DNA of 64,000 nt from Scyliorhinus canicula (lineage: Eukaryota): NCBI RefSeq assembly GCF_902713615.1, contig NW_024055654.1, forward strand, positions 248,001 through 312,000, given 5' to 3'. Positions 7,377-55,715 of this stretch are shown piece by piece. Positions within the stretch are counted from its first letter, which is position 1; every line of letters begins with the position of its first letter. The notes below the pieces were generated by a model. The model saw nothing but the letters and a program-made list of their open reading frames with translations, ran no database searches and was not told where the DNA came from. A program made the translations under genes and the position numbers.

Positions 7377-8234
7377 ATGGAAGCAAAAAGCATTGTTCAC
7401 AGTGGGGAGAAACCGTACACGTGTTGTGTGTGTGGACGAGGATTCACTCAACCATCAAGCCTCACAAGCCACAAATGCAGTCACACTGAGGAGAAACCGT
7501 GGAAATGTGCGGACTGTGGCAAAGGATTCACTTCCCCATCCAAGCTGGAAACTCATCGACGCAGTCACACTGGGGAGCGACCGTTCACCTGCTCCAAATG
7601 TGGGAAGGGATTCACTCAGTCATCCTCACTGTCCACACACCAGCGAGTTCACTCCAGGGAGAGACCATTCACCTGCTCCGAGTGTGGGAAGGGATTTACT
7701 ATTTCAGCCCACTTGCTGAGTCACCAGCGAGTTCACACTGATGAGAGACCGTTTCAGTGTCCAGACTGCGGGAAGTGCTATAAAAGTTCTGGGGAACTGA
7801 TGCGCCATCAACGTGTTCACACTGACGAGAGACCGTTTAGGTGCTCTCACTGCGGGACTGGGTTCAGGCGATCATCTGACCTCACTGTACATCAGCGAAT
7901 TCACACAGGGGTGAGGCCATTCACCTGCGCCAAGTGTGGGAAAGGATTCACTCAGTCATCCGATCTGCAGAAGCACCAGCGAATTCACACTGGGGAGAGG
8001 GCATTTACCTGCTCCAAATGTGGGAAGGGATTTACTACATCATCCATCTTGCTGGCACACCAGCGAGTTCACACAAACAAGAAAACTTTTAAATGTCCAG
8101 ACTGTGAGAAAGGCTACAAAAGTTCTGAGAAACTGATGCTCCATCAACGTGTTCACACTGACGAGAGACCGTTCAGGTGCTCTCACTGTGGGACTGGGTT
8201 CAGGCGAACATCTCAACTCGCTGCACACCAGTGA
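7377..8234 (+). CDS. class-1 tandem C2H2 zinc-finger protein; 9 complete fingers, premature TGA in finger 10 (ancestral ORF to TAA 8498, 13 fingers)
   Basis: CxxC-x12-HxxxH repeats with TGERP/TDERP linkers. Splice acceptor TTTCACAG at 7268 and ATG at 7377. Three more in-frame fingers follow the stop. Confidence 0.85.
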
Positions 8235-8819
8235 GTTCACACTGACAAGAGACCTTTCAAATGTCCAGACTGTGGAAAGTGCTTTAAAAGTTCTGGGGAA
8301 CTGACCCGTCACCAACGTGTTCACACTGAGGAGAAACCATTCAGGTGCTCTCACTGTGGGACTGGGTTTGTGCGATCATCTCAACTCACTGTACATCAGC
8401 GAATTCACACTGGGGAGAGGCCATTCCCCTGCTCCGAGTGTGGGAAGGGATTCACCACTTCATCCCACCTACTGAGACACCAATGTGGCCACAAGTAACC
8501 ACAGTGATTAGATTTTGCGATGTTCAGTTGGGTCTTTTTCTGCTGATAAATTCAAGCCCATTTACAGGGGCTAATATACTGGCTAAAAGTCAAATAAATT
8601 AGATTTGTGTGAAATACGCAGTGTGCTGAACCTTTTTAATATCTCTAACACAAGTCAGTCCCTTTTGAAGTACTCTCGTTCTCCCCTGTCTCTTCCATCC
8701 TCCCCTCCAACAAGAAGTGGGAGGAGCTGGTGGAGCTTCTTTGTGACTGAGATTAAGTAAATCTGATCAGCTGCCTCTGCTGCTTCCCTCCCTTCCATGA
8801 GCCTCTAATTTTCCTCATT

Positions 8820-10690
8820 GAGTGGTGAACCCTGAGGGCGAGAGGTCTGGATGGTGAGGAATTTGTTAACTGTGTCCAAGATGGTTTTTTTTGGAACAAT
8901 ATGTGGATAGTCCGACTAGATAGGAGTCTATATTGGACCTAATACTAGGGAACGAGCCCGGCCATGTCATCAAAGTTGTAGTAGGCGAACATGTGGCGAA
9001 CAGTGACCACAATTCCGTAAGCTTTGGGATATTCATGGAAAAGGACGAGTGTTGTCCTCGGGTTAAGGTGCTAAATTGGGATAAGCCTAACTACAACCAG
9101 ATTCGGCCGGATTTCGTGGCTGTTGTTTGGGAGAGGCTGTTTGAGGGGAAATCCATATTTGACATGTGGGAGTCTCTTAAGGAGCAGTTGATGGGAATGC
9201 AGAACAGGCATGTGCCGGTAAAAAGGAAGGACAGGAAAGGCAGGGTTCGGGAACCATGGATGACCAGGGAAATTGAGAATCTGGTCAAAATGAAAAAGAT
9301 GCATATGTTACGTAAACGCAACTAAAAACAGATGAAGCACTTGAGGAATAGAAGGAAAGTAGAAAATAGCTCAAGCTGTGAGTTAGGTGGGCAAAAAGGG
9401 GTCACAAAGTGTCCTTGGCAGATAGGATTAAGGAGAATCCCAAGGTATTTTATACGTATATTAGGAACAAAAGGGTAGCTGGAGAAAGAGTTGGTCCACT
9501 CCAGGACAAAGGAGGGAAATTATGGTGTAGAACCAAAGGAAGGAGGTGAAGTCCTTAATGAGTATTTTGCATCGGTATTCACAATGGAGAGGGACACGTT
9601 GATTGGTGGTGTCTCAGAGGGATGTGTAAAAACTTTTGAACAAGTCATTATTTCGAGGGAGGAAGTGTTTGTTAAAAAGCATTAAGGTAGACAAATCCCC
9701 ATGGCCAGGTGGCATCTATCCCAGATTACTGAGGGAGAAAAGAGAGGAAATCGCTGGGCCTCTAACATAAATCTTTGTCTCCTTATTGGCCACAGGTGAG
9801 ATCCCAGATGATTGGAGGGTAGCCAATGTTGTGCCGTTATTTAAGAAGGGTTGCAAGGATAATGTGGGTAATTATAGCCAGTGAGGTTGACGTCAGTGAT
9901 AGTGAAATTGTTGGAAAAGATTCTCAGAGATAGGATCTATGCACATTTGGAAGTGAATGGTCTTATTAGTGACAGACAGCATGGTTTTGTGCAAGGGGGG
10001 TCATGTCTCACTTGATTGAATTTTTTGAGGAGGTGACAAAATGATTGACGAGGGAAGGGCTGTGGATGTCCACATGGACTTTAGTAAAGCATTTGATAAG
10101 GTCCCTCATGGCAGGCTGGTGCAAAAGATTAGATCAAATGGGGTCAGGGGTGAACTAGTTGGATGGATCCAGAACTCACTTAGCCATAGAAGACAGAGGG
10201 TAGCAGTGAAAGGGTGTTTTTCCAAATGGAGGTCTGTCACGAGTGGTGTTCTGCAGGGATCAGTTCTGGGACCTCTGCTCTTTGTAATATATATAAATGA
10301 TTTAGTAAAAAACGTAGCGGGTCTGATTAGCAAGTTTGCGGATGGTACTAAGATTGCAGGAGTTGTGGATAGTGATGAAGATTGTCAGAGAATACAACAG
10401 GATATAGATAGGCTGCAAAATTGGCCGTGGAAATGGCAGATGGAATTTAACCCAGACAAATGCGAGGTGATGCATTTTGGTCGATCCAATTCAGGTGGGA
10501 GCTATAAAATAAATGGCAGAACCATCAGGTGCATAGATACACAGAGAGAGCTGGGTGTATAGGACCACAGATCCTTAAAAATGACAGCACAGGTGGAAAT
10601 GGTGGTAAAGAAAGCATATGGCATGCTTGCCTTCATAGGACGGGTATAGAATATAAAAGCTTGGAAATTATGTTACAGTTATATAGAACT
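8820..10690 (+). mobile_element. degenerate CR1 LINE ORF2 fragment (end of the APE endonuclease plus RT), 3'-truncated
   Basis: LDLILGNEP..SDHN, DFSKAFDKVPH, GVLQGSVLGP and KFADGTK motifs, with frameshifts and stops. Confidence 0.9.
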
Positions 10691-10999
10691 CATCCACACA
10701 CCGAACACGTGTATGGTTTCTCCCCGCTGTGAACGGTGCAATGTTTTTTCAGGCTGTGTAACTGGTTAAAGCTCTGTCCACAGTCAGTTCACTGGAACAC
10801 TCTGACTCGAGGAGTCTGTGTCGCGGTGCTTTTCCAGTCACACTGATGTCTGAAATCTTTTCCCACAAACAGTACAGAGAAACATTTCTCCTTCCACATT
10901 CAAAGGCCGATGATATTCAGGTTCTAAAAAATTGAGTGACTGTCAGATTTCGATATTTGGTTTCAGTTTTCTGTCGGCCAATGCTCCACTTCCAATATC
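10691..10999 (-). pseudogene. 5' remnant of a class-2 ZNF coding exon (leader only, finger array deleted)
   Basis: Reverse complement reads ..[52 protein letters not shown] and then abuts CR1. Acceptor at 11000-11002. Confidence 0.8.
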
Positions 11000-11284
11000 C
11001 TGTAAAAGGAGTTTATAAAAGCCATCACTGTCAGTCCAGATTAGAAATTCTGAACAGGCAATTCTAGTTTCTCTGGAACATTTGTTACTCTCTTGTTCCC
11101 CCAAAGCTGTAAATCCCCATCCTACACACTCTCCCTCCTCCCTGGGCTGAAATCCAAACCCATCTGCACCATTTCTTTCCTCCACTCCCAGTTTTCTCCC
11201 TCCCTCTCCTCTGCCTGGGTTCAGTTCTCCAGCTCCTGTCTGCAGACTGACAATAAAATCAATGGGTCTTATTGGGGGGTCCAG

Positions 11285-12723: not shown

Positions 12724-12831
12724 AGAATCGGAGTGGCACCATTCAAATCACTGGGTGGGATTCTCAGTGAACCAACAGCATTTGCTCAGAGAGAGGAAGG
12801 TTTATGTTACAGCTGATTAGAAGCAGCACAG

Positions 12832-15800
12832 ATAGTCTGCAGTCACACACAGCCTGCAGACACACACAGCCTGCAGGCACACACAGCCTGCAGACCCACA
12901 CAGCCTGCAGGCACACACAGCCTGCAGACCCACACAGCCTGCAGGCACACACAGCCTGCAGACCCACACAGCCTGCAGGCACACACAGGCTGCAGACACA
13001 TACAGCCTGCAGGCACACACAGCCTGCGGACACACACAGTCTGCAGTCACACACAGTCTGCAGACACACACAGCCTGCAGACACACACAGCCTGCAGACA
13101 CACACAGCCTGCAGACACACACAGCCTGCAGACACATACAGCCTGCAGGCACACACACAGCCTGCAGACACACACAGGCTGCAGACACATACAGCCTACA
13201 GGCACACACAGGCTGCAGACACACACAGCCTGCAGACACACACACAGCCTGCAGGCACACACAGCCTGCAGACACACACAGCCTGCAGACACACACAGTC
13301 TGCAGACACACACAGTCTGCAGTCACACACAGCCTGCAGACACACACAGCCTGCAGACACACACAGCCTGCAGTCACACACAGTCTGCAGTCACAGCCTG
13401 CAGACACACACAGCCTGCAGTCACACACAGCCTGCAGACACACACAGCCTGCAGTCACACACAGCCTGCAGACACACACACAGCCTGCAGACCCACACAG
13501 CCTGCAGTCACACACAGTCTGCAGACACACACACAGCCTGCAGACACACACAGCCTGCAGTCACACACAGCCTGCAGACACACACACAGCCTGCAGACAC
13601 ACACAGTCTGCAGTCACACACAGTCTGCAGTCACACACAGCCTGCAGACACACACAGCCTGCAGTCACACGCAGTCTGCAGTCACAGCCTGCAGACACAC
13701 ACAGCCTGCAGTCACACACAGCCTGCAGACACACACAGCCTGCAGTCACACACAGCCTGCAGTCACAGCCTGCAGACACACACAGTCTGCAGTCACACAC
13801 AGCCTGCAGACACACACAGCCTGCAGTCAGTCTGCAGACACACACAGTCTGCAGTCACACACAGCCTGCAGTCACACACAGCCTGCAGACACACACAGCC
13901 TGCAGACACACACACAGCCTGCAGACACACACAGTCTGCAGACACACACAGCCTGCAGACACACACAGTCTGCAGACACACACAGCCTGCAGACACACAC
14001 AGCCTGCAGACACACACAGCCTGCAGACACACACAGCCTGCAGACACACACAGTCTGCAGACACACACAGCCTGCAGACCCACACAGTCTGCAGACACAC
14101 ACAGCCTGCAGTCACACACAGCCTGCAGACACACACAGTCTGCAGACACACACAGTCTGCAGTCACAGCCTGCAGACACACACAGTCTGCAGACACACAC
14201 AGTCTGCAGTCACACACAGCCTGCAGACACACACAGCCTGCAGACACACACAGCCTGCAGTCACACACAGTCTGCAGTCACAGCCTGCAGACACACACAG
14301 CCTGCAGTCACACACAGCCTGCAGACACACACAGCCTGCAGTCACACACAGCCTGCAGACACACACACAGCCTGCAGACCCACACAGCCTGCAGTCACAC
14401 ACAGTCTGCAGACACACACACAGCCTGCAGACACACACAGCCTGCAGTCACACACAGCCTGCAGACACACACACAGCCTGCAGACACACACAGTCTGCAG
14501 TCACACACAGTCTGCAGTCACACACAGCCTGCAGACACACACAGCCTGCAGTCACACACAGCCTGCAGTCACAGCCTGCAGACACACACAGTCTGCAGTC
14601 ACACACAGCCTGCAGACACACACAGCCTGCAGTCAGTCTGCAGACACACACAGTCTGCAGTCACACATAGCCTGCAGTCACACACAGCCTGCAGACACAC
14701 ACAGCCTGCAGACACACACACAGCCTGCAGTCACACACAGCCTGCAGACACACACACAGCCTGCAGACACACACAGTCTGCAGACACACACAGCCTGCAG
14801 ACACACACAGTCTGCAGACACACACAGCCTGCAGACACACACAGCCTGCAGACACACACAGCCTGCAGACACACACAGCCTGCAGACACACACAGCCTGC
14901 AGACACACACAGGCTGCAGACACACACAGTCTGCAGACACACACAGCCTGCAGACCCACACAGTCTGCAGACACACACAGCCTGCAGTCACACACAGCCT
15001 GCAGACACACACAGCCTGCAGACACACACAGTCTGCAGACACACACAGTCTGCAGTCACAGCCTGCAGACACACACAGCCTGCAGTCACACACAGCCTGC
15101 AGACACACACAGCCTGCAGTCACACACAGTCTGCAGTCACAGCCTGCAGACACACACAGTCTGCAGTCACACACAGCCTGCAGACACACACAGCCTGCAG
15201 TCACAGTCTGCAGACACACACAGTCTGCAGTCACACACAGCCTGCAGTCACACACAGCCTGCAGACACACACAGCCTGCAGACACACACACAGCCTGCAG
15301 TCACACACAGCCTGCAGACACACACACAGCCTGCAGACACACACAGTCTGCAGACACACACAGCCTGCAGACACACACAGTCTGCAGACACACACAGCCT
15401 GCAGACACACACAGCCTGCAGACACACACAGTCTGCAGACACACACAGCCTGCAGACACACACAGCCTGCAGACACACACAGTCTGCAGACACACACAGG
15501 CTGCAGACACATACAGCCTGCAGACCCACACAGCCTGCAGACACACACAGTCTGCAGACACACACAGCCTGCAGACACACACAGGCTGCAGACACACACA
15601 GTCTGCAGACACACACAGCCTGCAGGCACACACAGGCTGCAGACCCACACAGGCTGCAGACACACACAGCCTTCAGACCCACACAGTCTGCAGACACACA
15701 CAGCCTGCAGTCACACACAGCCTGCAGACACACACAGCCTGCAGACACACACAGCCTGCAGTCACACACAGTCTGCAGACACACACAGTCTGCAGTCACA

Positions 15801-16390
15801 GCCTGCAGACACACACAGCCTGCAGTCACACACAGCCTGCAGACACACACAGCCTGCAGTCACACACAGCCTGCAGTCACAGCCTGCAGACACACACAGT
15901 CTGCAGTCACAGTCTGCAGACACACACAGTCTGCAGTCACACACAGCCTGCAGTCACACACAGCCTGCAGACACACACAGCCTGCAGACACACACACAGC
16001 CTGCAGTCACACACAGCCTGCAGACACACACACAGCCTGCAGACACACACAGCCTGCAGACACACACAGTCTGCAGACACACACAGCCTGCAGACACACA
16101 CAGCCTGCAGACACACACAGCCTGCAGACACACAGTCTGCAGACACACACAGCCTGCAGACACACACAGGCTGCAGACACACACAGCCTGCAGACACACA
16201 CAGCCTGCAGACACACACAGGCTGCAGACACACACAGTCTGCAGACACACACAGCCTGCAGGCACACACAGGCTGCAGATCCACACAGGCTGCAGACACA
16301 CACAGCCTGCAGACCCACACAGTCTGCAGACACACACAGCCTGCAGACACACACAGCCTGCAGACACACACAGTCTGCAGAGACACACAC
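12832..16390. repeat. 17-bp satellite (AGCCTGCAGACACACAC)n, ~210 units, with 9/13/19-bp variants
   Basis: Direct tandem repeat with CTGCAG in nearly every unit. Confidence 0.98.
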
Positions 16391-16547
16391 CTTTGAATAC
16401 ACAACCACATTCTGAAACACAGAGAGCGACAGTCACACACACTGACACAGGAATACCTCCTGTCCCATAAGGTGGACAGTCCCATCCAACCTGACCAATC
16501 CTGGGGTTAAAGTACCAGTGTCTGGAAAGACCACAGCGTTACGGAAA

Positions 16548-20804: not shown

Positions 20805-22529
20805 CTACTCACATATGACATCAGACAGCTCCTCCCAGGTGTGAGTGCGCTGGTGTGTCAGCAAGTTGGATGACTGAGTGAATCCTTTCCCACACTGAGA
20901 GCAGGTAAATGGTCTCTCTCCAGTGTGAACTCGCTGGTGTGTGAGCAGGTGGGATGACTGAGTGAAACGCTTCCCACACAAGGGGCAGCTGAACGGCCTT
21001 TCCCCAGTGTGAAGTCGCTGGTGTGTCAGCAGGTAGGATGAGGTAGTGAATCCTTTGCCACACACAGAGCAGGTGAATGGCCTCTTCCCCGTGTGAATAC
21101 GCTGATGTACAGTGAGGTCAGATGATCGCCTGAACCCAGTTCCACAGTCAGAGCACCTGAACGGTCTCTCATCAGTGTGAACACGTTGATGGGACATCAG
21201 TTCCTCAGAACTTTTATAGCACTTCCCACAGTCTGGACATTTAAAAGGTCTGTCCTCACTGTGAACTCGCTGGTGTCTCAGCAGGTTGGATGAATGAGCA
21301 AATTCCTTCCCACACTCAGAGCAGATGAATGGCCTCTCCCCGGTGTGAACTCGCTGGTGGGTCTGCAGATGGGATGAACAAGTGAATCTCTTCCCACACC
21401 CGGAGCAGCTGAATGGTCTCTCCCCAGTGTGAGTGCGCTGGTGGGTCTGCAGTTGTGATGAGGCACTGAATCCCTTCCCACACTCACTGCAGGGGAACAG
21501 CCTATCCCCAGTGTGAATTCGCTGGTGTTCCAGAAGACTATATCTCTGAGTGAATCTCTTCCCACAGTCTGAGCAGGTGAATGGCCTCTCCCCAATGTGA
21601 ATGTGCTGGTGTCTCTGGAGGTTGTGTGAGTGACTAAATCGCTTCCCACACCTGGAGCAGGTGAATGGTCGCTCCCCAGTGTGAACCCGCTGGTGTCTCA
21701 GTAAGTAGGCTGTACAAATGAATCCCTTTCCACACTTGGAGCAGATGAATGGTTTATCTCCAGTATGAATGCGTTGGTGTGTCAGCAAGTTGGATGACTG
21801 AGTGAATCTTTTCCCACATTTGGAGCAGATGAATGGTCTCTCTCCAGTGTGAACTCGCTGGTGTGTCTGCAGGTGGGATGACTGAGTGAATCCCTTCCCA
21901 CATTCAGAGCAGGTGAATGGCCTCTCCCCACTGTGAATACACTGGTGTGTCAGCAGGTAGGATGAGGTAATAAATCCTTTCCCACACTCAGAGCAGGTGA
22001 ACGGCCTCTCTCTGGAGTGACTGCAATGATGTACAGTCAGATCAGATGATCGTCTGAACCCAGTCCCACAGTCAGAGCACCTGAACGGTGTCATGTCAGT
22101 GTGAACATGTTGATGGGACATCAGTTCCCCAGAACCCCGACAGTGTTTCCCGCAGTCTGGGTATTTAAAAGGTCTCTCGTGGGTGTGAGCTCGCTGGTGT
22201 CTCAACGGGTTGGCTGAGTGAGCTAATCCCTTCCCACACTCGGAGCAGCTGAACGGTCTCTTCCCAGTGTGGACTCATTGGGGTCAATAGGTGGGATGAG
22301 GTAGTGAATGTCTTCCCACACTCAGAGCAAGTGAGCGATCTCTCCCTGTGTGTGTCACTGTGAATTTCCACTTCAATGGGTAATTGTATCCCTTCCCACA
22401 GTCCACACGTTTCTACGTTCTCTCTGCTGTAACTGCGTTTGGCTCAACAGGACAGCTGATCGGCTGAAATCTCAGCCACACAGAACCTGAGCACAGTTTC
22501 CACTGTGAACGGTGTTGTTTCCCTTCCAT
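20805..22529 (-). CDS. class-1 C2H2 ZNF; open frame 22205-20805 has 15 intact fingers, while the 5' part (ATG 22529 to ~22270) is frameshifted, so it is a possible pseudogene or uses an internal Met
   Basis: 466-aa ORF in the track. Class-1 leader GATTTTGAACATGGAAGGG. Acceptor at 22625-22627. Confidence 0.75.
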
Positions 22530-23059
22530 GTTCAAAATCCGTCAGCATTTGGATGATGATGAATTGGGCGACTATGTAAGATTCTGATGTGATGTTGAGT
22601 TTCAGTTTTCCAATGTTCAACCTCCTGTAAAATTGACAGAAAACAGAAAAGTGTGAGAATGAAATTGAGCTGAATTAATTTGGTCAGTTTGGGAAACACT
22701 CGGAAAAAGTGACCATGAAAACTGCTGGATTGTCATGAAAACCAACTGGTTCAGGAATGTCCTTCAGGGAAGGAATCCTGCCAACTGGTCTGGGCCAACA
22801 CAAGATTCAGACTTCTATAGGAGGAGGGAGAATGGAAGAGAGAGTGAGAGGAGAGGTGGGAGAGGTAGGGAATGAAGGAAAGGGTTTTTATCCATCTACA
22901 GCTTGACCAGACGTTTACAAATCTCTCAAGCCTTCAGCCTCCATCACCATAAAGGACCAGGGCAGCATGTGTATGACAACGCATTCACCTACAAATTCCT
23001 CTCCCAGTCACACACCGTACTGACATACTGAACTGGATGAGCAAACATTTACTGCATTT

Positions 23060-25480: not shown

Positions 25481-25808
25481 AGAGGAGACCCCAAACTCCC
25501 AATAAGACCCATTGATTTTATTGTCTGTCTGCAGACAGGAGCTGGAGAACTGAACACAGGCAGAGGGAGAAAACTGGGATTAGAGGAAAGAAATGGTGCA
25601 GATGGGTTTGGATTACAGCCCAGGGAGGAAAGGGAGGGTGTGTGGGATAGAAATTTACATCTTTCACTTTGGTAATCTTCATTTATAGGATATTCGAAGT
25701 GGATGATTTACAGATGGGAAATTAAAATTAAGCATCACAACAAAATTCAACAGAATCACTCGATTCAAGACCTCAATCTCATTTGCCTTTGAATGTGGAA
25801 GGAGAAAT

Positions 25809-27444: not shown

Positions 27445-27873
27445 ATGGAGAAACCGTGGAAATGTGGGGACTGTGGGAAAGGATTCAATTACCCATCCCA
27501 TCTCGAAACTCATCGACGCAGTCACACAGGGGAGAGGCCGTTCATCTGCTCCGTGTGTGGAAAAGATTTCATTCAGTCACAACACCTACAGTCACACCAG
27601 CGTGCTCACTCCAATAAGAGACCTGTAGAATGTTCTGACTGTGGGAAGAGCTTTAAAAGCAGAAAGAACCTGATGCAACACCAACACACTCACACTGGAG
27701 AGAGGCCGTTCACCTGCTCCATGTGTGGGAAAGGATTCACTCAGTCATCCACCCTGCTGAGGCACCAGCGGGTTCACACGGGGGAGAGGCCATTCACCTG
27801 CTCTGTGTGTGGGAAGGGATTGACTCGGTTAAGCATCCTCGCTGCACATCAACGTGTTCACATTGCTAAATGA
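27445..27873 (+). CDS. class-2 C2H2 ZNF, 5 fingers (decayed fingers continue to ~28015)
   Basis: ACCATGG start, [23 protein letters not shown]. The exon begins at 25689 and is split by the CR1 insertion. Confidence 0.7.
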   Translation: MEKPWKCGDCGKGFNYPSHLETHRRSHTGERPFICSVCGKDFIQSQHLQSHQRAHSNKRPVECSDCGKSFKSRKNLMQHQHTHTGERPFTCSMCGKGFTQSSTLLRHQRVHTGERPFTCSVCGKGLTRLSILAAHQRVHIAK

Positions 27874-34405: not shown

Positions 34406-34693
34406 AGATGGAAGGGTCCATCTCTGATCAATGTCAATGAACCAGTTGGGTTTTTATAACAATCCGACAGTTTTCAGTCACTTTTTCCCAGTGATGGTCC
34501 CACAAATGACCAGCTTCATTTTGCTGTTTCACAGCCTGTCTTTGTGTGTTTCACTCCCTCTTTTTTGTTTTCAATCAATTTCACAGGTGTTAGAAGGGGA
34601 GGACTGCAGTAAAGAAACTCAAACCCAATATAACATTTGTGTTTGATGCCATCACCCACTTTATCCTAAACTGAATATCATCGGAATTTGAAC

Positions 34694-35977
34694 ATGGAAG
34701 AAAAAAGCCCCGTTCACAGCGGAGAGAAACTGTACACATGTTGTGTGTGTGGACGAGGCTTTAATCAATCACCTGCCCTGTTGAAACATAAATGCAATCA
34801 CAGCGGAGAGAAACCGTGGAAATGTGGAGACTGTGGGAAGAGATTCAATCACCCATCTGAGTTGGAAACTCATCGACACAGTCACACCGGAGAGAGGCCG
34901 TTCACCTGTCCTGAGTGTGGGAAGGGATTCACTCAGTCATCCCACCTGCTGAGACACCAGCGAGTTCACACTGACGAGAGACCTTTTCAATGCCCAGACT
35001 GCGGGAAGTGCTGTAAAAGCTTGAGCGATCTGATGTCCCATCAACGTGTTCACACTGACAAGAGACCTTTTAAATGTCCAGACTGTTTGAAGTGCTATAA
35101 AAGTTCTGGGGAACTGATGCGTCATCAACGTGTTCATACTGAGGAGAAACCATTTAAATGCTTGGACTGCCAGAAGAGTTATAAAAGTTCTGGAGAACTG
35201 ATGTCTCATCAACGTGTTCACACTGACGAGAGACCTTTTCAATGTCCAGACTGTGGGAAGTGCTACAAAAGTTCTGGGGAACTGATGCACCATAAACGTG
35301 TTCACACCGATGAGAGACCGTTCAGGTGCTCTCACTGCGGGACTGGGTTCAGGAAATCGTCTGGCCTAACTGAACACCAGCGAATTCACACTGGAGAGAG
35401 GCCGTTCACTTGCACAGAGTGTGGGAAGAGATTCACTCAGTCATCCACCCTGCGGAGACACCAGCTGGTTCATACTGAGGAGAGACCTTTTAAATGCCCA
35501 GACTGTGGGAAATGCTATAAAAGTTCTGGGGAACTGATGCTCCATCAACGTGTTCACACTGATGAGAGACCATTCAGATGCTCTCACTGCGAGACTGGGT
35601 TTAAACAATCATCTCAACTCTCTAAACACCAGCGCGTTCACACTGGGGCGAGGCCATTTACCTGCACTGCGTGTGGGAAGGGATTCACTCAGTCATCCAG
35701 TCTGCTGACACACCAGCGAGTTCACAGTGAGGAAATGTTTAAATGCCTAGTCTGCAGGAAGGGATATAAACACCCTGGGGACATCCCACCTCATGACATA
35801 CAAGCAGGTTCACACAGGGGAGAGACCATTCACTTGCACCATGTGTGGGAAGGGATTCACTCAATCATCCAACCGGCTGAGACACCACTGAGTTCACAAG
35901 TGACTTCAGGAGTTGGATTTTGCTGTCAGCCACTTGTGATGAATATCAGACTGTCCACAGGACTTGGTTTAGAATAA
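34694..35977 (+). CDS. class-1 C2H2 ZNF, 12 intact fingers, frameshifted C-terminus
   Basis: Acceptor at 34586 and ATG at 34694. After ~35770 the last finger is out of frame (ancestral end CACAAGTGA at ~35903). Confidence 0.85.
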
Positions 35978-37094
35978 GGACATGTATAAGCAGCAGAAAT
36001 TAATACACCAAGTGTTTTAATTCAAAGTGGAATAAAACCATTTTAACAGAAAGGTCTTTCAAAAGTCAGTATCAGCTGCAAAAACTTTAGAAGTCCCCTG
36101 GGATCAGACATCTCAGGGCTTAAGGACAGCCCATAAATTCTTCAAATGACCTTCCTGCAATTCTAACCACAAGCCAGGGCCCTTGAAGGGCCCTTAGTTT
36201 TTTCCATGTCGGTGCAACATCGAGGACCGAAGGGCCTGTACTGCGCTGTATCGTTCTATGTTCTAAGGTATATAGAGATAGCAAGTCGAATAAAATAAGC
36301 AAACTTCCTTCTTAGCTATAGAACCTTTGACACTTGAGAATGCCAATTGGAATAGTGGCTATCTGGACATCTATATATTTAAGAATCTTGACACATTAAA
36401 AATAGAGAAAAGTAGCGATGTGTCTCGAACCACTCCCTGTCCGACCACATTACACGAAATAGGAAGAAATGTGTCTGTAAACGGGCAGATTCACAGAATC
36501 GGTACTCACTCTCTCTCCAGCTAAGAGTGCAGTTAGAGTTCTGTTCCTCAGCCTGCTTCGTCAAACAAAGACCATTGTGGTTTTTGTAAGTTTGTTTCTA
36601 TTGAACTTCTTCAAAATATATTAGAAATTGATATGAGATACTTTAGGATTTTCTATGTTCAGATATATACTTCTCTTAGAGACGTTAGTGTGTTAGCAGA
36701 TGACAAAAGGCTGTTGACTGATTTCTATTTTTAACTGACAAAGGACTGTTAACCAATTCATAATTTTAACTCTGCAATTTTGTATGTATAAATTGAAAGT
36801 ATTTTATAATAAAATACTATTCGAAATAACTGTGTAGTCTTACTCTCAATAATTTTGTATCCTTTCTGCTGTTGACCCTTTTATGTCTTTATCCATGAAC
36901 TTCAATTCTACTAGACACGTTTTGAAAGTTCCTGTATACACCATCTACAGCACGAACCTCACCCACATTCTTACCTCATCAAAAAAGTTGTTTAATAAAA
37001 GATGATTTACCATTAATAAATTTTATATCAGTCCATACTTGCTGATTTGGGTGTTAATATTTTCCTGGATTTTGACTTCTGCTGCACAATGCAC

Positions 37095-37791
37095 GTGGTG
37101 AACCCTTTGGTGTCTCAGCAGAGTGGACAAGGTAGTGAATCCCTTTGCACACTTGGAGCAGACAAATGGCCTCTCTCCTCTGTGAACTCGCTGTTGGGCC
37201 AGTAGGTTAGATGACAGTGAATCCCTTCCCACGATCAGAGCAGGTGAACGGCCTCTCCCCAGTGTAAATTCTCTGGTGTGAAAACAGGTCGGTTGACTGA
37301 GCGAATCCCTTCGCACGATTGGAGCAGGTAAACGGCCTCTCCCTGGTGCGAATTCGCTGGTGTACAGCGAGTTAAGACGATCACTTGAATCCCATCGCAC
37401 AGTGAGAGCACCTGAACGGTCTCTCATCATTGTGAACACGTTGATGAGACTTCAGTTCCCCAGAACATTTATAGCACTTCCTGCAGTCTGGGCATTTAAA
37501 CGGTCTCTCATCAGTGTGAACTCGCTGGTGTCTCAGCAGATCAGTTGACTGAGTGAATCCCTTCCCACATGTATAGCAGGTGAACAGCCTCTCACCAGTG
37601 TGACAACGCCAGTGCTTTACCAGGTCAGAAGGGATCATGAATCCCTTCCCACAATCCCCACATTTCCTCGGCTTCTCCCCGTTGTGACAGCATTTATGTA
37701 CTGACAGGTCAGATGATTGGCTGAATCCTTGTACACACAAAGAACACGTGTATGATTTTTCCCCACTGTGAACAACGCGCTTTCCTTCCAT
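37095..37791 (-). pseudogene. class-1 C2H2 ZNF with premature stops after 4 fingers
   Basis: ATG at 37791, TGA at 37383-37381 and a TAA three codons later. Fingers continue with an indel. Acceptor at 37900-37902. Confidence 0.8.
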
Positions 37792-37934
37792 GTTCAAAAT
37801 CCGATGATATTCAGGATTCAATAAATTAGCCAACTCCATCAGATCCTGATGAGTTTTTTAGTTTGAGTTTCCCAACTGCAAATGCTCCCTTCTAATGCCC
37901 TGCGAAACTAATTACAAACAGAAAAATAGGGAGT

Positions 37935-43800: not shown

Positions 43801-44598
43801 CGCTAACAGCCCCACATCCAGCCGCCACAGCGGGCGCTGGTCCCGCGCCTCCCCCATTTCCACATCCACCCAATGCGGTGCATGATCAGAGATCGCAATG
43901 GCCGAGTACTCAGCTTCCCGTACCCTCGGGATCAGCCCCCTGCTCAACACGAAGAAATCGATTCTGGAGTACACTCTATGGACGTGGGAGAAAAAGGAAT
44001 ACCCCCTCGCCCTCGGCCTACCAAACCTCCATGGGTCTACTCCTCCCATCTGCTCCATGTACCCCCTCAGCACTTCTGCCGCTGCCGGCCTCCTATTGGT
44101 CCTTGAGCTCGATCTGTCTAGCCCGGGGTCCAGCACTGTGTTAAAGTCCCCCCCCATGATCAAGCCCCCTGCCTCCAGTCCCGGAATGAGGCCCAATAGG
44201 CGCCTCATAAAACCCGCGTCATCCCAGTTCGGGGCATATACGTTGACCATCACCACTTTCTCCCCCTGCAGCTTACCCTTCACCATCACATACCTACCCT
44301 CCTTATCCGCCACCACCTCCTCCGCCACGAACGACACCCTCTTTCCCACCAGAATCGCCACCCCCCGGTTCTTTGCGTCCAATCCAGAGTGGAACACCTG
44401 TCCCACCCACCCCCTTCTCAGGCGAACCTGGTCCACTACCTTCAGATGGGTCTCCTGTAACATTGCTACATCAGCCTTCAGTCCCTTCAGGTGTGAGAAT
44501 ACCCTTGATCTCTTGACCGGCCCATTCAACCCCCTCACGTTCCAAGTGATCAGCCGGGTCGCGGGACGACCCGCCCCCTTCCCCTGCCGATTAGCCAT
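40803..44598 (-). CDS. L1 ORF2p (APE endonuclease, reverse transcriptase, Cys-rich C-terminus), ~1264 aa, with one +1 frameshift near 42099
   Basis: WNVRGLN, LQETH, GGDFN, SDH, KAPGPDG, YADD and CxxC..HxxWxC motifs. The 879-aa and 431-aa ORFs join if one T is removed from TGCTTTGCCC. Confidence 0.95.
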
Positions 44599-45369
44599 GT
44601 CCTGTTCCCTGCTCGCCCCGGGTCGACCCTTCCCTTCTGACCCGCTCCCCATGGCGATGTCCCCCTCCCCCCACCTCTCCAGCCCTCCACTTCCCGTTTC
44701 TGGTCTTTTCAGCAGCAACCCGGTATCCCTCCCTAACCCCCCTCACCCCCCACCCCCAGGCTAGGACCCCTCCTAGCCGCGATGTACCCTCCATCGTACT
44801 CCCGTAAGTCAGCTGGTTCACGCTGACCCGGCTGCTCCTGCCACACTCCGACTCCCCCCGGCTCGGGGGGGGGGGCCTCCCCCCCCTTGCCACTCCTCCC
44901 TGGCCCCGCTCCAGCGCGGGAAAGGTCGCCATTGCTAGCCACGCCCCACACTCCTCCCCTCCCCCCTCCTCTGCCCCGCGCGCGGGAAAACAGAGGAAAG
45001 CCCGCGCTTTCGCCCTGCCACACCCCACCCCGCCATCTTCAGTTCCACCCCCGTCCCCGTCCATGCCTGTAAAAGAACCCCCCCTAGGAACCCATATCCC
45101 CGATCTGCTCTCCCCCCCGTCCCACCTCCCCAACTTAACATTATAAATAACAGATAAATAACAAATAACAATGTACTTAACAGTCGCCCTCTACCAAACA
45201 GCATAAATAACCATAAATAACCATGAATAACCACAATAACAATAACTAAGGGAAGTTGGCAAAGGGGGAAAAAACATCAGAAGAAAAACCACAGCAAGAG
45301 TTCAAAATCCAAACAAAGAATTCAGCAGAAAGTACCCGAGCGGCTACGGCCGCCAAGTATCCCCTGGGT

Positions 45370-46215
45370 CTAATTCGAGTCCAGTTTCTCTTCCTGTACA
45401 AAGGCCCACGCCTCCTCTGGGGACTCAAAATAGTGGTGTTGGTTCCTGTAGGTGACCCACAAGCGCGCTGGCTGCAGCATTCCGAACCTGATCCGTTTTG
45501 CATGTAGCACCGCCTTCGTCCGGTTGTACCGGGCCCGCCGCTTTGCCACCTCCGCACTCCAGTCCTGGTAGACCCTCACCGTCGAATTCTCCCACTTGCT
45601 GCTCCTTTCCCTCTTGGCCCACTCCAGCACTCTCTCACGGTCGCTGAGTCGCTGGAACCGCACCAGCACCGCCCTCGGGGGCTCATTTGCTCTTGGCCTC
45701 CTAGCCATGACCCTGTAGGCCTCTTCCAGCTCCAGGGGCGAAGGGACGGCCCCTGCCCCCATCAGGGAGCTCAGCATTTCTGCTACATATCCCGGGAGGT
45801 CTGACCCCTCCAGGCCTTCTGCCAGGCCCAAGATCCTCAGGTTCTTCCGCCTCATTCGGGTATCCAGCTCCTCAAAACGGCTCTGCCATTTCAGGTGGAG
45901 TGCCTCGTGCACCTCTACCTTTCCCACGAGGACCGTGGCCTCCTCCTCCCTCACAGTCATCTCCTGTTGCAGCTCCCGAATCGACGCCTCTTGGGTCGCC
46001 TGGGCTCCCATCAGCCTGGTGGTCGTCGCATTCATTGACTCCAAGAGCTCCATTTTCAGCTCCGTAAAGAAGCGCAGGAGAGCGGCCTGCTGCTCCTCCG
46101 CCCATTTCCTCCATTCCTCGGGTGCGCCACCGGCCGCCATTTTGGTCTTCTTCCCCCGCTTTTTTTTGGGAGCTGCTGTTGCTTTCTTTACCACCCCACT
46201 CCGGGTACCGACCAT
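45370..46215 (-). CDS. L1 ORF1p (coiled coil, RRM, C-terminal domain); start at ATG 46215 or 46140
   Basis: RRKNLRILGLAEG, AYRV..PRAVLVRF, YQDWS..RR and PARLWVT are L1 ORF1-type motifs. Confidence 0.9.
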   Translation of the reverse strand: MVGTRSGVVKKATAAPKKKRGKKTKMAAGGAPEEWRKWAEEQQAALLRFFTELKMELLESMNATTTRLMGAQATQEASIRELQQEMTVREEEATVLVGKVEVHEALHLKWQSRFEELDTRMRRKNLRILGLAEGLEGSDLPGYVAEMLSSLMGAGAVPSPLELEEAYRVMARRPRANEPPRAVLVRFQRLSDRERVLEWAKRERSSKWENSTVRVYQDWSAEVAKRRARYNRTKAVLHAKRIRFGMLQPARLWVTYRNQHHYFESPEEAWAFVQEEKLDSN

Positions 46216-46529
46216 AAAGTTGGTCTGGTTCTCTTCAGGGAGCCTTCCCCCACCGGGATTTGTCCTTACAGCGCCGTTGGGGCCCTCCAATCGGCCCGAA
46301 AACACCTTTGTAGCAGGAGCAGCCAAACGTGCGACTTAGCTGGTCATAGCCGCAACCGGAAGTCCAGGATAGGAATTGAGAGACATTTTTCTTGTCTGTT
46401 GCAAATCCTTCCCTCTTAATCCTGAAGTTTCTAAACACTCCGTGCAAACTGAGCGCGGGATTTTGTAATTCAGGTTTGCAGTCCTACACCGAGTGTTTGA
46501 CAATCCCTCCCAGTCCACTCTCCTGCACT

Positions 46530-47458: not shown

Positions 47459-48159
47459 TGGCGAATGCAGCAGGGAGCTATCATCTCCTATGGAGTTGTT
47501 TAGGTCCAGAAGAGGCCCCTTTCCTAGACACATTCCATTTTCCGAGTATGAATATATGGACCTTCTCGCAAGTGTTAGTGGAACACTTTACGAGCCCGAC
47601 TGAGAATCTTCAAAATTTGGTATTCCTGTGTCTGTCGCGATGTGTATCAGATATAAAAGGTTTTGACACAACGTCCTTTTAGCAATACTCCAGTGTCTTA
47701 AAGGATGAGAAAGTAGGAGACAGAGAGAGAGATGGAAAGAGAGAATTTCAGAGTTTGAGGATGAGAGATCAGAAGGCATGGTCACTAATGGTGGAACAAT
47801 GAAAAAGCGAATTAGAGAAGCGCAGATATCTCGGAGGGTTGTAGAGATGGGTGATGAAGCCGTGGAGAGATGTGAACACAATGAGGAGAATTTTAATCTA
47901 AAGGCATTTAGAGTGAGAAAGAGATGAAAAATTGTTCCATAGAAACTGGAATTCTATATTTTTATTTTTGGGTGATGACTTTTGCAAACTCTTTTTGCAG
48001 ATAATTAGAAAAAGAGGATTTGCAGATGGGAAACTTGAATCAAATATCATATAAAGATCCAGCACAGTCACTCGATTCATCAGGACCTGAATATCTTCTG
48101 GCTTTGAATTGGAAGGAAATGTTCATCTGTTCTGTCTGTGGGAAAAGACCTCAAACAAA

Positions 48160-48512: not shown

Positions 48513-49271
48513 ATGGAGAAACCCTGGAAATGTGAGGACTGTGGGAAAGGATTCAGTTGCCCAGCCCTGCTGGAAATTCATCGACGCAGTCACACTGGGG
48601 AGAGACCATTCACCTGCTCCGAGTGTGGAAAGGGATTCACTCAGTCATCCCAACTGCTAACACACCAACGGTTTCACACTGGGGAGAAACCGTTCACCTG
48701 TTCTGAGTGTGGGAAGGGATTCACTCAGTTATCTGACCTGCGGAGACACCAGCTAGTTCATACTGGGGAGACTCGTTTCAGCTGCTCCGAGTGTGGGAAG
48801 GAATTCATTCAGTCATCCAATCTGCTGAGACACCAGCAAGTTCACACTGGGGAGAGACCGTTCACCTGTCCTGTATGTGGAAAAGCATTCATTGGGTCCT
48901 CTGACCTGCTAAGTCACCAGCGGATTCACAGTGAGGAGAGGCTGTTCAGCTGTACATCCTGTGGAAAGAGATTCCGGACTTCAGCCCACCTCAGTGTACA
49001 CCAGCGAGTTCACGCTGGGGAGAAGCCGTTCATCTGCTCTGAGTGTAGGAAGCAATTTGCTCAGTTATCTCACCTACAGACACACCAGCGAATACACACT
49101 GGGGAGAGACCATTCACCTGCTCTGAGTGTGGCAACAAATTCACTTGTTCATCCCACTTGAGGAGACACCAGCGAGTTCACACAGGGAACAGGCCATTTA
49201 CCTGCTCCACGTGTGGGAAGATATTCACTCAGTCTGGCAGCCTGCTGAGACACCAGCGAGTTCACAAGTGA
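48513..49271 (+). CDS. intact class-2 C2H2 ZNF, 252 aa, 9 fingers
   Basis: MEKPWKC start and HQRVHK* end. Acceptor TTTTGCAG at 48000. Confidence 0.9.
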   Translation: MEKPWKCEDCGKGFSCPALLEIHRRSHTGERPFTCSECGKGFTQSSQLLTHQRFHTGEKPFTCSECGKGFTQLSDLRRHQLVHTGETRFSCSECGKEFIQSSNLLRHQQVHTGERPFTCPVCGKAFIGSSDLLSHQRIHSEERLFSCTSCGKRFRTSAHLSVHQRVHAGEKPFICSECRKQFAQLSHLQTHQRIHTGERPFTCSECGNKFTCSSHLRRHQRVHTGNRPFTCSTCGKIFTQSGSLLRHQRVHK

Positions 49272-53182: not shown

Positions 53183-53214
53183 GATAAAGTGAGATACAGG
53201 AGAAACTGGAGATT

Positions 53215-54190: not shown

Positions 54191-54287
54191 GATGTGGGAC
54201 AAGGACTTGGATGAGGAACTTTAGACGCAGACTGGTTCGCTGTGTTCGTGGAGAGAGGGAAGCAGCTGATCAGATTGTCTCAATCTT

Positions 54288-54590
54288 AGTGGCATGGTGG
54301 CAAGTGGTTAGCACTGCTGCCTCACAGCTCCAGGTTCGATTCCGGTCTTGGGCGACTCTCTGTGTGGACTTTTCACATTATTCCCGTGTTGTTTCCTCCG
54401 GGTGCTCCGGTTTCCTCCCACAGTCCAAAGCTGTGCAGGTTAGATGTATTGGCCATGCTAAATTGTCCCTAGGTGGGGTTATAGGGATAGGGTGGGCAAT
54501 TGTGTCCAGGTACAGTGTTCTTTCAGAGGGTCGGTACAGACTTGATGGGCCGAATAGTCTCCTTCTGCACTGTAAGGATTCTATGATGAT
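54288..54590 (+). mobile_element. HE1-like SINE, tail type B
   Basis: SINE body and tail. Confidence 0.8.
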
Positions 54591-54845
54591 GCCCGTGACA
54601 ACAAAACTCCATGAGCTCCTCACACTTGTTGGATGTGAGGATGGAGGATGTGAGGGGGAAAGGGAGACCACTTCAAAAGAAATTCACGTGAGGTCGAGAT
54701 ATTAAAAAGTCAAAGCTGATTTATTTTTCTTTCATCAGTAATAGTAACAACTGTAACAGATGTGGGGTTTATTCACACAGAAACAGACTCCAATGAACAT
54801 GATTGAGTCCTGGATGTGATTCAAAGCAAGATCCAATCACTGTCG

Positions 54846-55715
54846 TTACTCGTGAACTTGCTTGTGTCTCAGCAAGTTGGATATCCGAATGAATCCCTTC
54901 CCACACTGAGAGCAGGTGAATGGCCTCTCCCCAGTGTGAACTCGCTGATGCATAGTGAGTTCAGATGATCGTCTGAACCCATTCCCGCAGTGAGAGCATC
55001 TAAACGGTCTCTCGTCAGTGTGAACACGTTGATAGAATACCAGATCCCAGGTCCTTTTGTAGCACTTCCCGCAGTCTGGACATTTAAAAGGTCTCTCATC
55101 AGTGTGAACTCGCTGATGGGACATCAGTTCCCCAGAACCTTTAAAGCCCTTCCCATAGTTCTGACATTTAAATGGTCTCTTGTCTGTGTGAACTTGTTGG
55201 TGTCTCAACAGGTTGGATGAATCAGTGAATCCTTTTCCACACTCGGCGCAGGTGAATGTCTTCTCCCAAGTGTGAACCCGCTGGTGTTTCAATAGGTTGG
55301 ATAAATCATTGAATCCTTTCCCACATGTGGAGCAGGTGAATGGCCTCTCCCCAGTGTGAACTCGCTGATGTCTCAGCAGGCTAGATAAATGAGCAAATTC
55401 CCTCCCACACTCGGAGCAGTTGAATGGTTTATCCCCAGTGTGAATTCTCTGGTGTGCCAGCAGGTTGGATGACTGAGTGAATCCCTTACCACATGTGGAG
55501 CAGGTGAATGGTCTCTCCCCGGTGTGACTGCATCGATGAGTTTCCAGCTCAGACGGGGAACGAAATGCCTCCTCGCAATCCCCACATTTCCACCGTTTCT
55601 TCCCAGTGTGAATGTGTTTGTGTCTCCTCAAGCCTGACGATTGACTGAAGCCTTGTCCACACACAGAACACGTGTACGATTTCTCCCCAGTATGATCGGT
55701 GCTTTTCCCTTCCAT
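54846..55715 (-). CDS. class-1 C2H2 ZNF, 289 aa, 9 intact fingers and 1 degenerate finger
   Basis: Open [15 protein letters not shown]...HKQVHE*. Acceptor at 55815-55817. Confidence 0.88.

What the first reader, a model, noticed from the sequence alone, without database searches (positions are those of the whole stretch)
7730..55230. Constant fingers among variable ones: a KSSGEL + RCSHCGTGF finger pair in every class-1 gene, a candidate effector module
Seen: all five class-1 genes carry the finger F(K/Q)[21 protein letters not shown] (or a close variant) next to [21 protein letters not shown], joined by acidic TDERP linkers. The pair occurs 3 times at 7.7-8.4 kb, twice at 21-22 kb, twice at 35 kb (with four KSSGEL-type fingers in tandem), and once each at 37.4 and 55 kb. 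Helix positions -1/+2/+3 are mostly S/G/E, and there is an extra Cys after the CxxC. Neighbouring FTC-type fingers vary freely at the base-contact positions. Two class-2 genes have an analogous CSDCGKSFKSxxDL finger. Inference: since no N-terminal repressor domain is visible, a conserved finger pair could act as the protein-interaction or cofactor-recruiting part. A shared DNA half-site is the alternative.
Basis: partly seen in the sequence, partly recalled or inferred. Interest (0 to 1): 0.75.

Follow-up and report, generated by a model that had tools for sequence, protein, structure and literature searches.

The report
Conserved finger pair in shark zinc-finger genes
A catshark cluster of DNA-binding zinc-finger genes carries a recognisable pair of fingers that is real and shared with distant sharks, but here it evolves much like its neighbouring fingers and looks like ordinary DNA-reading fingers, not a proven cofactor-recruiting module.

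Summary
Five arrays (G1 7.4-8.5 kb, G2 20.8-22.3, G4 34.7-35.7, G5 37.2-37.8, G7 54.8-55.7) carry 13 KSSGEL-type (K) and 9 RCSHCGTGF-type (R) fingers. Every R directly follows a K, giving 9 pairs at the stated places.

K, R and the N-terminal Y and W fingers are separate finger lineages in a unit tree. Class-2 KSFKS fingers are sisters of K. Extra pairs per gene come from 3- and 4-finger block duplications.

The pair is old. Heterodontus has a K-TDERP-R pair 82% identical to a catshark pair, Cetorhinus has one, and Pristiophorus has the K finger.

Inside the window the pair is not specially constrained:
- Codon-model omega is 0.44 (K) and 0.40 (R) against 0.57 and 0.61 for flanking fingers, and the difference is not significant.
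- Base-contact positions +3 (R) and +6 (both) vary freely.
- K and R are the fingers most often disabled.

Fold and closest solved relatives are canonical DNA-bound fingers. The one distinctive feature is that Gly-less linkers flank every K.

An effector role is untested and not favoured. The scan had noted this fingers-only shark family on other DNA, but not this pair.

The parts
7416..8507 (+). G1 finger array (13 units: Y W F F K R F F K R K R F). The ORF from ATG 7377 ends at a TGA (8232-8234) inside the second R finger.
7752..7919 (+). G1 K-R pair 1, intact
8088..8255 (+). G1 K-R pair 2. K is a variant (EKGY...SSEKL). R carries an in-frame stop.
8256..8423 (+). G1 K-R pair 3, intact
7565..8242 (+). 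336-base (four-finger F-F-K-R) tandem duplication, 82% matches. It explains pairs 1 and 2.
20826..22253 (-). G2 finger array (17 units). The 5' leader and first fingers are decayed by frameshifts.
22002..22169 (-). G2 K-R pair A. K has lost its first Cys (Tyr).
21078..21245 (-). G2 K-R pair B, intact
34733..35740 (+). G4 finger array (12 units: Y W F K K K K R F K R F). The ORF runs from ATG 34694 to 35977 with a frameshifted tail. RNA-run contigs lie on it.
34985..35320 (+). Four K fingers in tandem in G4
35237..35404 (+). G4 K-R pair 1
35489..35656 (+). G4 K-R pair 2
35216..35733 (+). 252-base (three-finger K-R-F) tandem duplication, 84% matches
37165..37752 (-). G5 array, a pseudogene with stops, lost ligands and a frameshift
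37333..37500 (-). G5 K-R pair. R has two in-frame stops and its last His is changed to Arg.
54837..55676 (-). G7 array (10 units: Y W F F F F K K R F). The ORF runs from ATG 55715 to 54846.
54921..55088 (-). G7 K-R pair. K has its first His changed to Tyr.
55089..55172 (-). Extra G7 K finger with the CxxC lost (CQNY)
27625..27708 (+). Class-2 K-like finger (CSDCGKSFKS) in G3, preceded by a Gly-less linker
63373..63792 (+). Three class-2 K-like fingers in G8 (63373-63456, 63541-63624, 63709-63792), alternating with F fingers. Each is preceded by an SD(Q/K)RP linker.

Best explanation
The KSSGEL (K) and RCSHCGTGF (R) fingers are two old finger lineages, each inherited as a unit. They sit side by side as a cassette, [Gly-less linker]-K-TDERP-R, usually one to three fingers from the C-terminal end. 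The genes belong to a shark-specific, KRAB-less C2H2 zinc-finger family whose ancestral plan is leader, Y finger, W finger, a run of generic F fingers, K, R, last F.

Genes with several pairs acquired them by duplicating blocks of three or four fingers. Both fingers are canonical beta-beta-alpha C2H2 fingers.

The most likely mechanism is inferred, not shown. They read DNA like their neighbours, supplying a conserved anchor sub-site. R carries an Arg(-1)/Asp(+3) helix of the Zif268 type. K is a weak, low-specificity reader. Positions +6 (both) and +3 (R) are still tuned gene by gene.

In this window most carriers are decaying genes, and the pair is under the same relaxed purifying selection as the fingers beside it.
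For: Lineages by descent. In a tree of all 84-base units, K forms a clade (13 of 13, support 0.996). K plus the class-2 K-like fingers form a clade (17 of 17, 0.945), as do R (9 of 9, 0.81), W (0.98) and Y (0.98).

Block duplication. There is a 336-base repeat in G1 and a 252-base repeat in G4.

Age. The Heterodontus francisci protein P0194 ends with a K-TDERP-R pair 82% identical to G1 pair 1. Cetorhinus P0182 has K-TDERP-R-F-stop. Pristiophorus P0181 and S. torazame P0123 carry K. Heterodontus P0185 carries an R with the same [11 protein letters not shown] helix.

Same selective regime as the neighbours.
- IQ-TREE GY omega is 0.565 (upstream F), 0.435 (K), 0.399 (R) and 0.609 (downstream F).
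- The partitioned model against a single model gives 2dlnL = 16.3 for 18 extra parameters, which is not significant.
- Li93 gives 0.55, 0.64, 0.42 and 0.77.
- Framework codons give NG86 omega 0.20-0.21 in K and R (0.26 and 0.38 in the flanking F fingers), while contact codons are above 1 in all types. This is the usual signature of DNA-reading fingers.

Canonical nature.
- Pfam zf-C2H2 and zf-H2C2_2 match.
- AlphaFold2 gives two beta-beta-alpha units for K-R (pLDDT 84.7, pTM 0.46), like the F-F control (87.3, 0.53).
- The best sequence and fold matches are DNA-bound ZFP568, PRDM9, Aart, Zif268 and CTCF.
- ZFP568 itself has a TDEK linker inside a DNA-bound array.
Against: No DNA-binding datum exists for any of these proteins.

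Some features depart from the best DNA-binding consensus:
- Every linker leading into a K (18 of 18) and every K-to-R linker (9 of 9) lacks the Gly of TGEKP and is acidic.
- R has CGT where other fingers have the CGK lysine. By my knowledge of Zif268-DNA structures, that lysine position touches a phosphate.
- K has Ser, Gly and Glu at -1, +2 and +3, a poor base-reading set.

The long-term conservation of KSSGEL and RSSDLTV across shark orders would fit a conserved protein surface as well as a conserved DNA sub-site.
Confidence: 0.55

Rival explanations
1. Spacer or hinge reading. K does not read bases. Flanked on both sides by Gly-less acidic linkers, it bridges or interrupts the array. This splits it into an N-terminal reading block (Y, W, F...) and a short C-terminal block (R, F), much as finger 8 of CTCF bridges two blocks.
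For: All 18 linkers into K and all 9 K-to-R linkers lack Gly. By contrast Gly is present in 22 of 26 F-to-F, 7 of 7 W-to-F and 6 of 8 R-to-F linkers. The same Gly-less linker precedes the class-2 K-like fingers and the K fingers of Pristiophorus and S. torazame. K has weak base-reading residues (Ser -1, Gly +2, Glu +3). [quoted passage not shown] The linker block of the K-R model has lower pLDDT than the control, 78 against 85.
Against: Asp and Asn are the non-Gly residues that best tolerate the left-handed capping conformation (my knowledge), so TDERP may still latch. ZFP568 has a TDEK linker in a DNA-bound array. Position +6 of K is the most variable site of the finger, with pN 0.60. That is what a base-contacting position does, and an idle surface should drift more evenly. 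In Heterodontus P0194 the linker before K is a normal TGEKP.
Confidence: 0.2
2. In a family without KRAB or any other N-terminal effector, the K-R pair is the protein-interaction or cofactor-recruiting module.
For: No effector domain is found in the ORFs, and the shark homologues list no KRAB family. KRAB families are reported as lost or absent in cartilaginous fishes (PMC8455134). In G4, G5 and G7 the protein can only start 13 codons before finger 1. The pair and its TDERP linker are conserved across shark orders. It departs from the DNA-binding consensus at the linker Gly and the CGK lysine. C2H2 fingers are known to mediate protein contacts (Brayer and Segal 2008, cited in PMC8455134; PMC8084297).
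Against: No partner, no tethering assay and no interaction signal of any kind is available. The pair is not more constrained than its neighbours. Outside the obvious pseudogene G5, the only disabled fingers are K or R: 4 of 20 against 0 of 32, Fisher p = 0.018. That is odd for the one indispensable part. Class-2 genes and G6 lack R, and G6 lacks K too, yet they belong to the same family. There is no sign of special inter-finger packing. A conserved leader exists in relatives and is an equally good effector candidate.
Confidence: 0.12
3. Descent only. The similarity of the copies reflects recent duplication or gene conversion inside a decaying cluster. The pair has no function of its own.
For: Three- and four-finger block duplications are present. 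Transversions at four-fold sites among the K copies next to R are very few, 0.014 against 0.10-0.12 for the other finger types. With Li93 this lowers K dS to 0.24 and raises omega to 0.64. Four of the five carrier genes show disabling lesions.
Against: Synonymous divergence among copies is still substantial (dS 0.24-0.5), and omega stays below 1. The same pair, 73-82% identical at the protein level, is present in Cetorhinus and Heterodontus, and K is present in Pristiophorus. Recent events in one catshark cluster cannot explain that.
Confidence: 0.08

Closest known systems
Tandem poly-zinc-finger (Krueppel-type C2H2) gene clusters, such as mammalian KRAB-ZNF clusters
   Same: Tandem arrays of 28-residue C2H2 units with H/C links. 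Clustered paralogues lie among retroelements, and many are pseudogenes. Framework codons are conserved, base-contact codons change fast, and arrays grow by duplicating blocks of fingers.
   Different: There is no KRAB, SCAN, BTB or other Pfam effector domain. The proteins start 13 codons before the first finger. Fixed N-terminal (Y, W) and C-terminal (K, R) finger lineages bracket the variable fingers.
CTCF finger 8, a bridging finger outside the major groove
   Same: One finger inside a DNA-binding array may not read bases and may separate two reading blocks. K has weak contact residues and non-consensus linkers on both sides.
   Different: This rests only on sequence analogy. No structure or footprint exists for K, and its +6 position varies like a base-contacting residue.
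Ikaros-family C-terminal dimerisation fingers and other protein-binding C2H2 fingers (Brayer and Segal 2008)
   Same: A conserved pair of fingers near the C-terminal end, distinct from the DNA-reading fingers, could serve protein contacts.
   Different: By my knowledge, the Ikaros fingers depart strongly from the consensus in sequence and linkers. K and R keep the full consensus spacing, the hydrophobic core and H/C-link-like linkers. Their best matches are DNA-bound fingers.
Zif268/Egr1 fingers (helix RSDELTR)
   Same: The R helix (R-S-S-D-L-T-V from position -1) has Arg at -1, an acidic residue at +3 and Leu-Thr at +4/+5, like the Zif268 helices. Zif268-DNA complexes are among the best fold matches.
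   Different: R has Ser, not Asp, at +2, Val at +6, and Thr in place of the basic residue of the CG(K/R) turn.

Membership tests
C2H2 (Krueppel-type) zinc finger, Pfam PF00096 / PF13465 | C-x2-C-x12-H-x3-H ligand spacing with the conserved aromatic and Leu of the core | tested here: met
   17 of the 22 K/R fingers keep all four ligands and an open frame, and all keep the spacing. Pfam zf-C2H2 E = 4e-62 and zf-H2C2_2 E = 2e-64 on the G1 ORF.
C2H2 (Krueppel-type) zinc finger, Pfam PF00096 / PF13465 | beta-beta-alpha fold | tested here: met
   The AlphaFold2 model of the K-R pair has two strand-strand-helix units (helices 13-24 and 41-52) and pLDDT 84.7, like the F-F control. Foldseek's best hits are DNA-bound C2H2 arrays.
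C2H2 (Krueppel-type) zinc finger, Pfam PF00096 / PF13465 | TGE(K/R)P H/C link between fingers | tested here: inconclusive
   Length and the T..RP frame are kept. But the Gly is absent in all 18 linkers into K and all 9 K-to-R linkers, which read TDERP, TEEKP, TDKRP and similar. It is present in most other linkers.
KRAB zinc-finger proteins | N-terminal KRAB domain (PF01352) | tested here: not met
   There is no PF01352 hit in the window ORFs. The shark relatives list no PF01352. KRAB families are reported lost or absent in cartilaginous fishes (PMC8455134).
SCAN-, BTB-, ZAD- or FiNZ-type zinc-finger proteins | A named N-terminal oligomerisation or effector domain | tested here: not met
   Pfam finds only finger families in G1 and G4. 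Only a short conserved leader without a Pfam name precedes the fingers in relatives. Upstream exons outside the ORFs were not all recovered.
Protein-binding C2H2 fingers (effector or dimerisation fingers) | A demonstrated protein partner, or activity when isolated from the DNA-reading fingers | not testable with these tools
   No interaction or reporter data exist. The sequence tests give no stronger constraint than in the neighbours.
Bridging or spacer fingers (CTCF finger 8 type) | The finger lies outside the major groove without base contacts | not testable with these tools
   Only indirect evidence exists: Gly-less linkers and weak contact residues.

The most novel reading that the evidence does not exclude
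In sharks, which lack KRAB, a fingers-only zinc-finger family may carry its effector inside the array. On this reading the K-TDERP-R cassette, conserved across shark orders with its Gly-less acidic linkers and its missing CGK lysine, is a protein-docking module that recruits the silencing or activating machinery, while the variable F fingers choose the DNA target.
Probability: 0.12. Interest if true: 0.7.

Novelty: new variant of a known kind. Interest (0 to 1): 0.3.

Why it matters
How large zinc-finger families outside tetrapods act without KRAB is an open question. A conserved cassette bracketing a variable array gives a concrete, small construct (56 residues) to test for DNA anchoring, hinge behaviour or cofactor binding.

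As it stands, the finding mainly documents the internal architecture of a shark-specific family: fixed end fingers, a variable middle, and growth by block duplication. It also shows that the simple 'constant, therefore effector' argument does not survive positional controls.

Tried and rejected
1. A protein search scored on the K-R region alone was swamped by long tetrapod zinc-finger proteins, because every finger pair adds score. No shark protein appeared among the 120 listed. Searches anchored on the leader or limited to short proteins did work.

2. Fetching orthologous DNA from S. torazame, Cetorhinus and Mobula failed because the sample files were too large. No orthologue-based dN/dS could be computed, and cross-species evidence is at the protein level only.

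3. Reads and contigs laid on G4 are dominated by short unitigs and multi-mapping among paralogues, and the listed 'joints' are repeat artefacts. I take from it only that near-exact contigs from RNA-labelled runs cover 34587-36400, and that two contigs continue beyond 34587. Transcription is therefore likely but not proven.

4. NG86 gave omega near 0.3 for K and R. However, per-codon pS exceeds 1 at two-fold codons, which shows a transition bias. Li93 and the ML codon model are the figures I rely on.

5. I tested the idea that K-R packs into a compact two-finger unit by folding it beside an F-F control. There was no difference.

6. A literal text search for the motifs found no paper.


Full report
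**What is in the window.** The window is a retroelement-rich cluster of C2H2 zinc-finger genes from a catshark.
- The best named relative of the first gene is a Scyliorhinus torazame protein, 86% identical over the leader and the first two fingers.
- A paralogue is RefSeq XP_038643830.1 of S. canicula.
- Pfam finds only finger families in the finger ORFs.
- Pfam finds LINE-type endonuclease plus reverse transcriptase in 42079-44718(-), and a reverse-transcriptase fragment in 25900-27135(-).
- A six-frame scan found 79 regular fingers. Stepping in 84-base units resolved eight arrays, G1 to G8, with 83 units.

**Observation.** I sorted the units into five types.
- Y is the first finger and W is the second.
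- F is the generic [19 protein letters not shown] finger.
- K is the KSSGEL type and R is the RCSHCGTGF type.
- Ser/Gly/Glu at -1/+2/+3 hold in 9, 9 and 10 of the 13 K fingers. The extra Cys holds in 9 of 13.
- Class-2 arrays G3 and G8 hold four related KSFKS..DL fingers.
The caveat is that five K/R fingers are disabled by stops or lost zinc ligands.

**State of the genes.**
- G1, G4, G5 and G7 share an ATG in the identical context TTGAACATGG, 13 codons before finger 1. In G4, G5 and G7 an in-frame stop lies just upstream, so their products can only be fingers-only proteins.
- G1 ends at a stop inside its second R finger.
- G2 has lost its 5' part to frameshifts.
- G4 has a frameshifted tail.
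- G5 is a clear pseudogene.
- In G7 both K fingers have lost a ligand.
- Near-exact contigs from RNA-labelled runs cover G4 from 34587 onwards, and two of them run on upstream. Transcription and splicing are likely, but paralogy makes the picture noisy.

**Finger lineages and how the copies arose.**
- In a maximum-likelihood tree of all units, each type is a clade: K 13 of 13 (support 0.996), R 9 of 9 (0.81), W (0.98) and Y (0.98).
- The class-2 K-like fingers are the sister group of K (17 of 17, support 0.945).
- So the types are inherited finger lineages, not convergent look-alikes.
- Tandem Repeats Finder shows a 336-base, four-finger F-F-K-R duplication in G1 (82% matches). It also shows a 252-base, three-finger K-R-F duplication in G4 (84% matches). 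These account for the multiple pairs per gene.
- In G1, G4 and G7, and in the Cetorhinus and Heterodontus relatives, the array ends K-R-F or close to it. The ancestral plan therefore looks like leader, Y, W, variable F run, K, R, last F.

**Is the pair more constrained than its neighbours?** I compared K and R with positional controls, namely the F finger just upstream of K and the F finger just downstream of R.

| Measure | upstream F | K | R | downstream F |
|---|---|---|---|---|
| NG86 omega, all 28 codons | 0.40 | 0.33 | 0.31 | 0.52 |
| Li93 omega | 0.55 | 0.64 | 0.42 | 0.77 |
| GY codon model omega (IQ-TREE) | 0.565 | 0.435 | 0.399 | 0.609 |

- NG86 dS is similar across the four sets, 0.42-0.56.
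- Per-codon pS above 1 at two-fold codons reveals a transition bias, so I rely on Li93 and the codon model.
- With Li93, K has the lowest dS (0.24) because it has very few four-fold transversions.
- Giving each finger position its own codon model improves lnL only from -1773.08 to -1764.93 for 18 extra parameters (2dlnL = 16.3), which is not significant.
- Framework codons are constrained in all four sets, with NG86 omega 0.20-0.38. The four base-contact codons run at or above the synonymous rate in all types. Contact dN is 0.41 in K and 0.42 in R, against 0.61-0.63 in the flanking F fingers.
- Per site, K is quieter than F at -1 and +3 but more variable at +6 (pN 0.60). R is invariant at +2 but as variable as F at +3 and +6.
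- Disabled fingers number K 3 of 13, R 2 of 9, F 2 of 29 and W/Y 0 of 8. Leaving out the pseudogene G5, this becomes 4 of 20 against 0 of 32 (Fisher p = 0.018).
- Inside this cluster the pair is therefore at most slightly more conserved than its neighbours, and it is not protected from decay.

**Across species.** The pair is nevertheless old.
- Heterodontus francisci XP_067892418.1 (P0194) ends with K-TDERP-R, 82% identical to G1 pair 1.
- Cetorhinus P0182 has K-TDERP-R-F-stop, 73% identical.
- Heterodontus P0185 has an R finger with the same [11 protein letters not shown] helix.
- Pristiophorus P0181 has an almost exact K ([12 protein letters not shown]) behind a TDERP linker, and S. torazame P0123 has K plus a truncated R.
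- Looser K-like fingers (..KSS.EL.. or ..KS..DL..) behind Asp-containing linkers occur in Mobula, Heterodontus and Chiloscyllium, and behind an SSERP linker in Rhinoraja.
- By my knowledge of shark phylogeny these orders separated roughly 200 million years ago or more. That figure is not a tool result.
- This rules out 'recent duplication only'. It shows long-term retention of the two helices in at least some functional genes.
- Between the two catsharks, K differs at 4 of 23 residues and the F fingers at 2-5 of 23. This is my reading of the sequences printed, so there too K is not the most conserved finger.

**Biochemical reading.**
- K and R are canonical fingers.
- AlphaFold2 gives two beta-beta-alpha units for K-R (pLDDT 84.7, pTM 0.46). 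This is no different from the F-F control (87.3, 0.53), and there is no sign of special packing.
- The best sequence and fold matches are DNA-bound ZFP568, PRDM9, Aart, Zif268 and CTCF.
- The distinctive feature is the linkers. All 18 linkers that lead into a K or K-like finger, and all 9 K-to-R linkers, lack the Gly of TGEKP. Gly is present in 22 of 26 F-to-F, 7 of 7 W-to-F and 6 of 8 R-to-F linkers.
- R also has CGT where other fingers have CGK. By my knowledge of Zif268-DNA structures, that position contacts a phosphate.
- A review describes the linker residues as needed for latching on DNA, and CTCF finger 8 as a bridge outside the groove (PMC8084297).
- On the other side, ZFP568 has a TDEK linker inside a DNA-bound array. 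Asp and Asn are also the non-Gly residues best able to take the capping conformation (my knowledge).

**The effector question.**
- No KRAB or other named domain is present, in line with the reported loss or absence of KRAB families in cartilaginous fishes (PMC8455134).
- Relatives carry a conserved leader of about 45 residues (..LQ.GNSNQ.S..DLTESLDSSGPEYH.PLN.EG..). A profile of it found 37 representative proteins. All those I looked up by name are from sharks.
- In the window's class-1 genes this leader is out of frame or interrupted.
- The leader is an equally good, and equally untested, candidate for an effector motif.

**Verdict.**
- The best-supported reading is that K and R are inherited, position-specific finger lineages. 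They form a C-terminal cassette, are multiplied by block duplication, and most likely work as DNA-reading fingers that supply a conserved anchor sub-site (0.55).
- A hinge or spacer role for K is a serious rival (0.2).
- Pure descent without function is unlikely, given the cross-species conservation (0.08).
- No paper in the library contains the motifs.
- Earlier notes of this scan describe the same fingers-only shark family and its constant first finger on other pieces of the genome, but none mentions this pair.

Noticed in passing
window 7269-7376, 34586-34693, 37792-37899(-), 55716-55814(-): The leader before finger 1 is read in two frames. The same DNA gives ..[13 protein letters not shown].. 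in one frame, which is the frame annotated in Pristiophorus and Heterodontus. It gives ..[13 protein letters not shown].. in another frame, which is annotated in S. torazame, S. canicula XP_038643830.1 and Cetorhinus. In the window's class-1 genes the leader is frameshifted or stopped relative to the fingers. A conserved ATG (TTGAACATGG) sits 13 codons before finger 1.
   Followed up: partly
window 60406-60519(-), 47972-48109(+), 25681-25815(+), 62776-62879(+), 10886-11071(-), 22518-22626(-): There are separate leader-like exons or relics (..LQ.GNSNQ..SLDSSGPEY..PL..) upstream of G7, G6, G3, G8 and G2. One more belongs to an otherwise decayed gene relic near 10.7-11.1 kb, which also has a [13 protein letters not shown] remnant at 10696-10734(-). 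A profile of this leader finds 37 representative proteins in 1.84 billion. All those I looked up by name are shark proteins.
   Followed up: partly
window 12837-16389: A 17-base tandem repeat (about 211 copies, 87% matches) produces a spurious 1203-residue ORF at 12804-16415 and strong GC and AT skew.
   Followed up: no
window 4687-6307: A 39-base tandem repeat, about 42 copies at 91% matches, lies just upstream of G1.
   Followed up: no
window 40803-46326(-): A LINE-like element has an open 879-residue ORF holding an endonuclease (PF03372) and a reverse transcriptase (PF00078) at 42079-44718(-). It is flanked by open ORFs without Pfam hits at 40803-42098(-) and 45370-46326(-). A second reverse-transcriptase fragment lies at 25900-27135(-).
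   Followed up: no
window 7500-7583, 27457-27540, 34817-34900, 48525-48608, 55509-55592(-), 63121-63204: The W finger ([21 protein letters not shown]) is the most constrained finger type in the window. Its omega is 0.19 (NG86) or 0.32 (Li93) at the highest dS. It occurs in all classes and in Chiloscyllium and Heterodontus, with looser forms in Mobula and Rhinoraja. It is a better example of a 'constant finger' than K or R.
   Followed up: partly
K units, e.g. window 7752-7835, 35237-35320, 35489-35572: The K copies next to R share nearly invariant codons at several four-fold sites (TCT, CTG, CGT, GTT). Four-fold transversions run at 0.014 against 0.10-0.12 in the other finger types. This could be gene conversion, younger common ancestry or chance in 28 codons.
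   Followed up: partly
protein P0183 (Hippolais icterina, a bird): A bird zinc-finger protein has a TDERP linker followed by FRCPECKTGFR.., an R-like finger start. The R features are therefore not strictly unique to sharks and may arise convergently.
   Followed up: no
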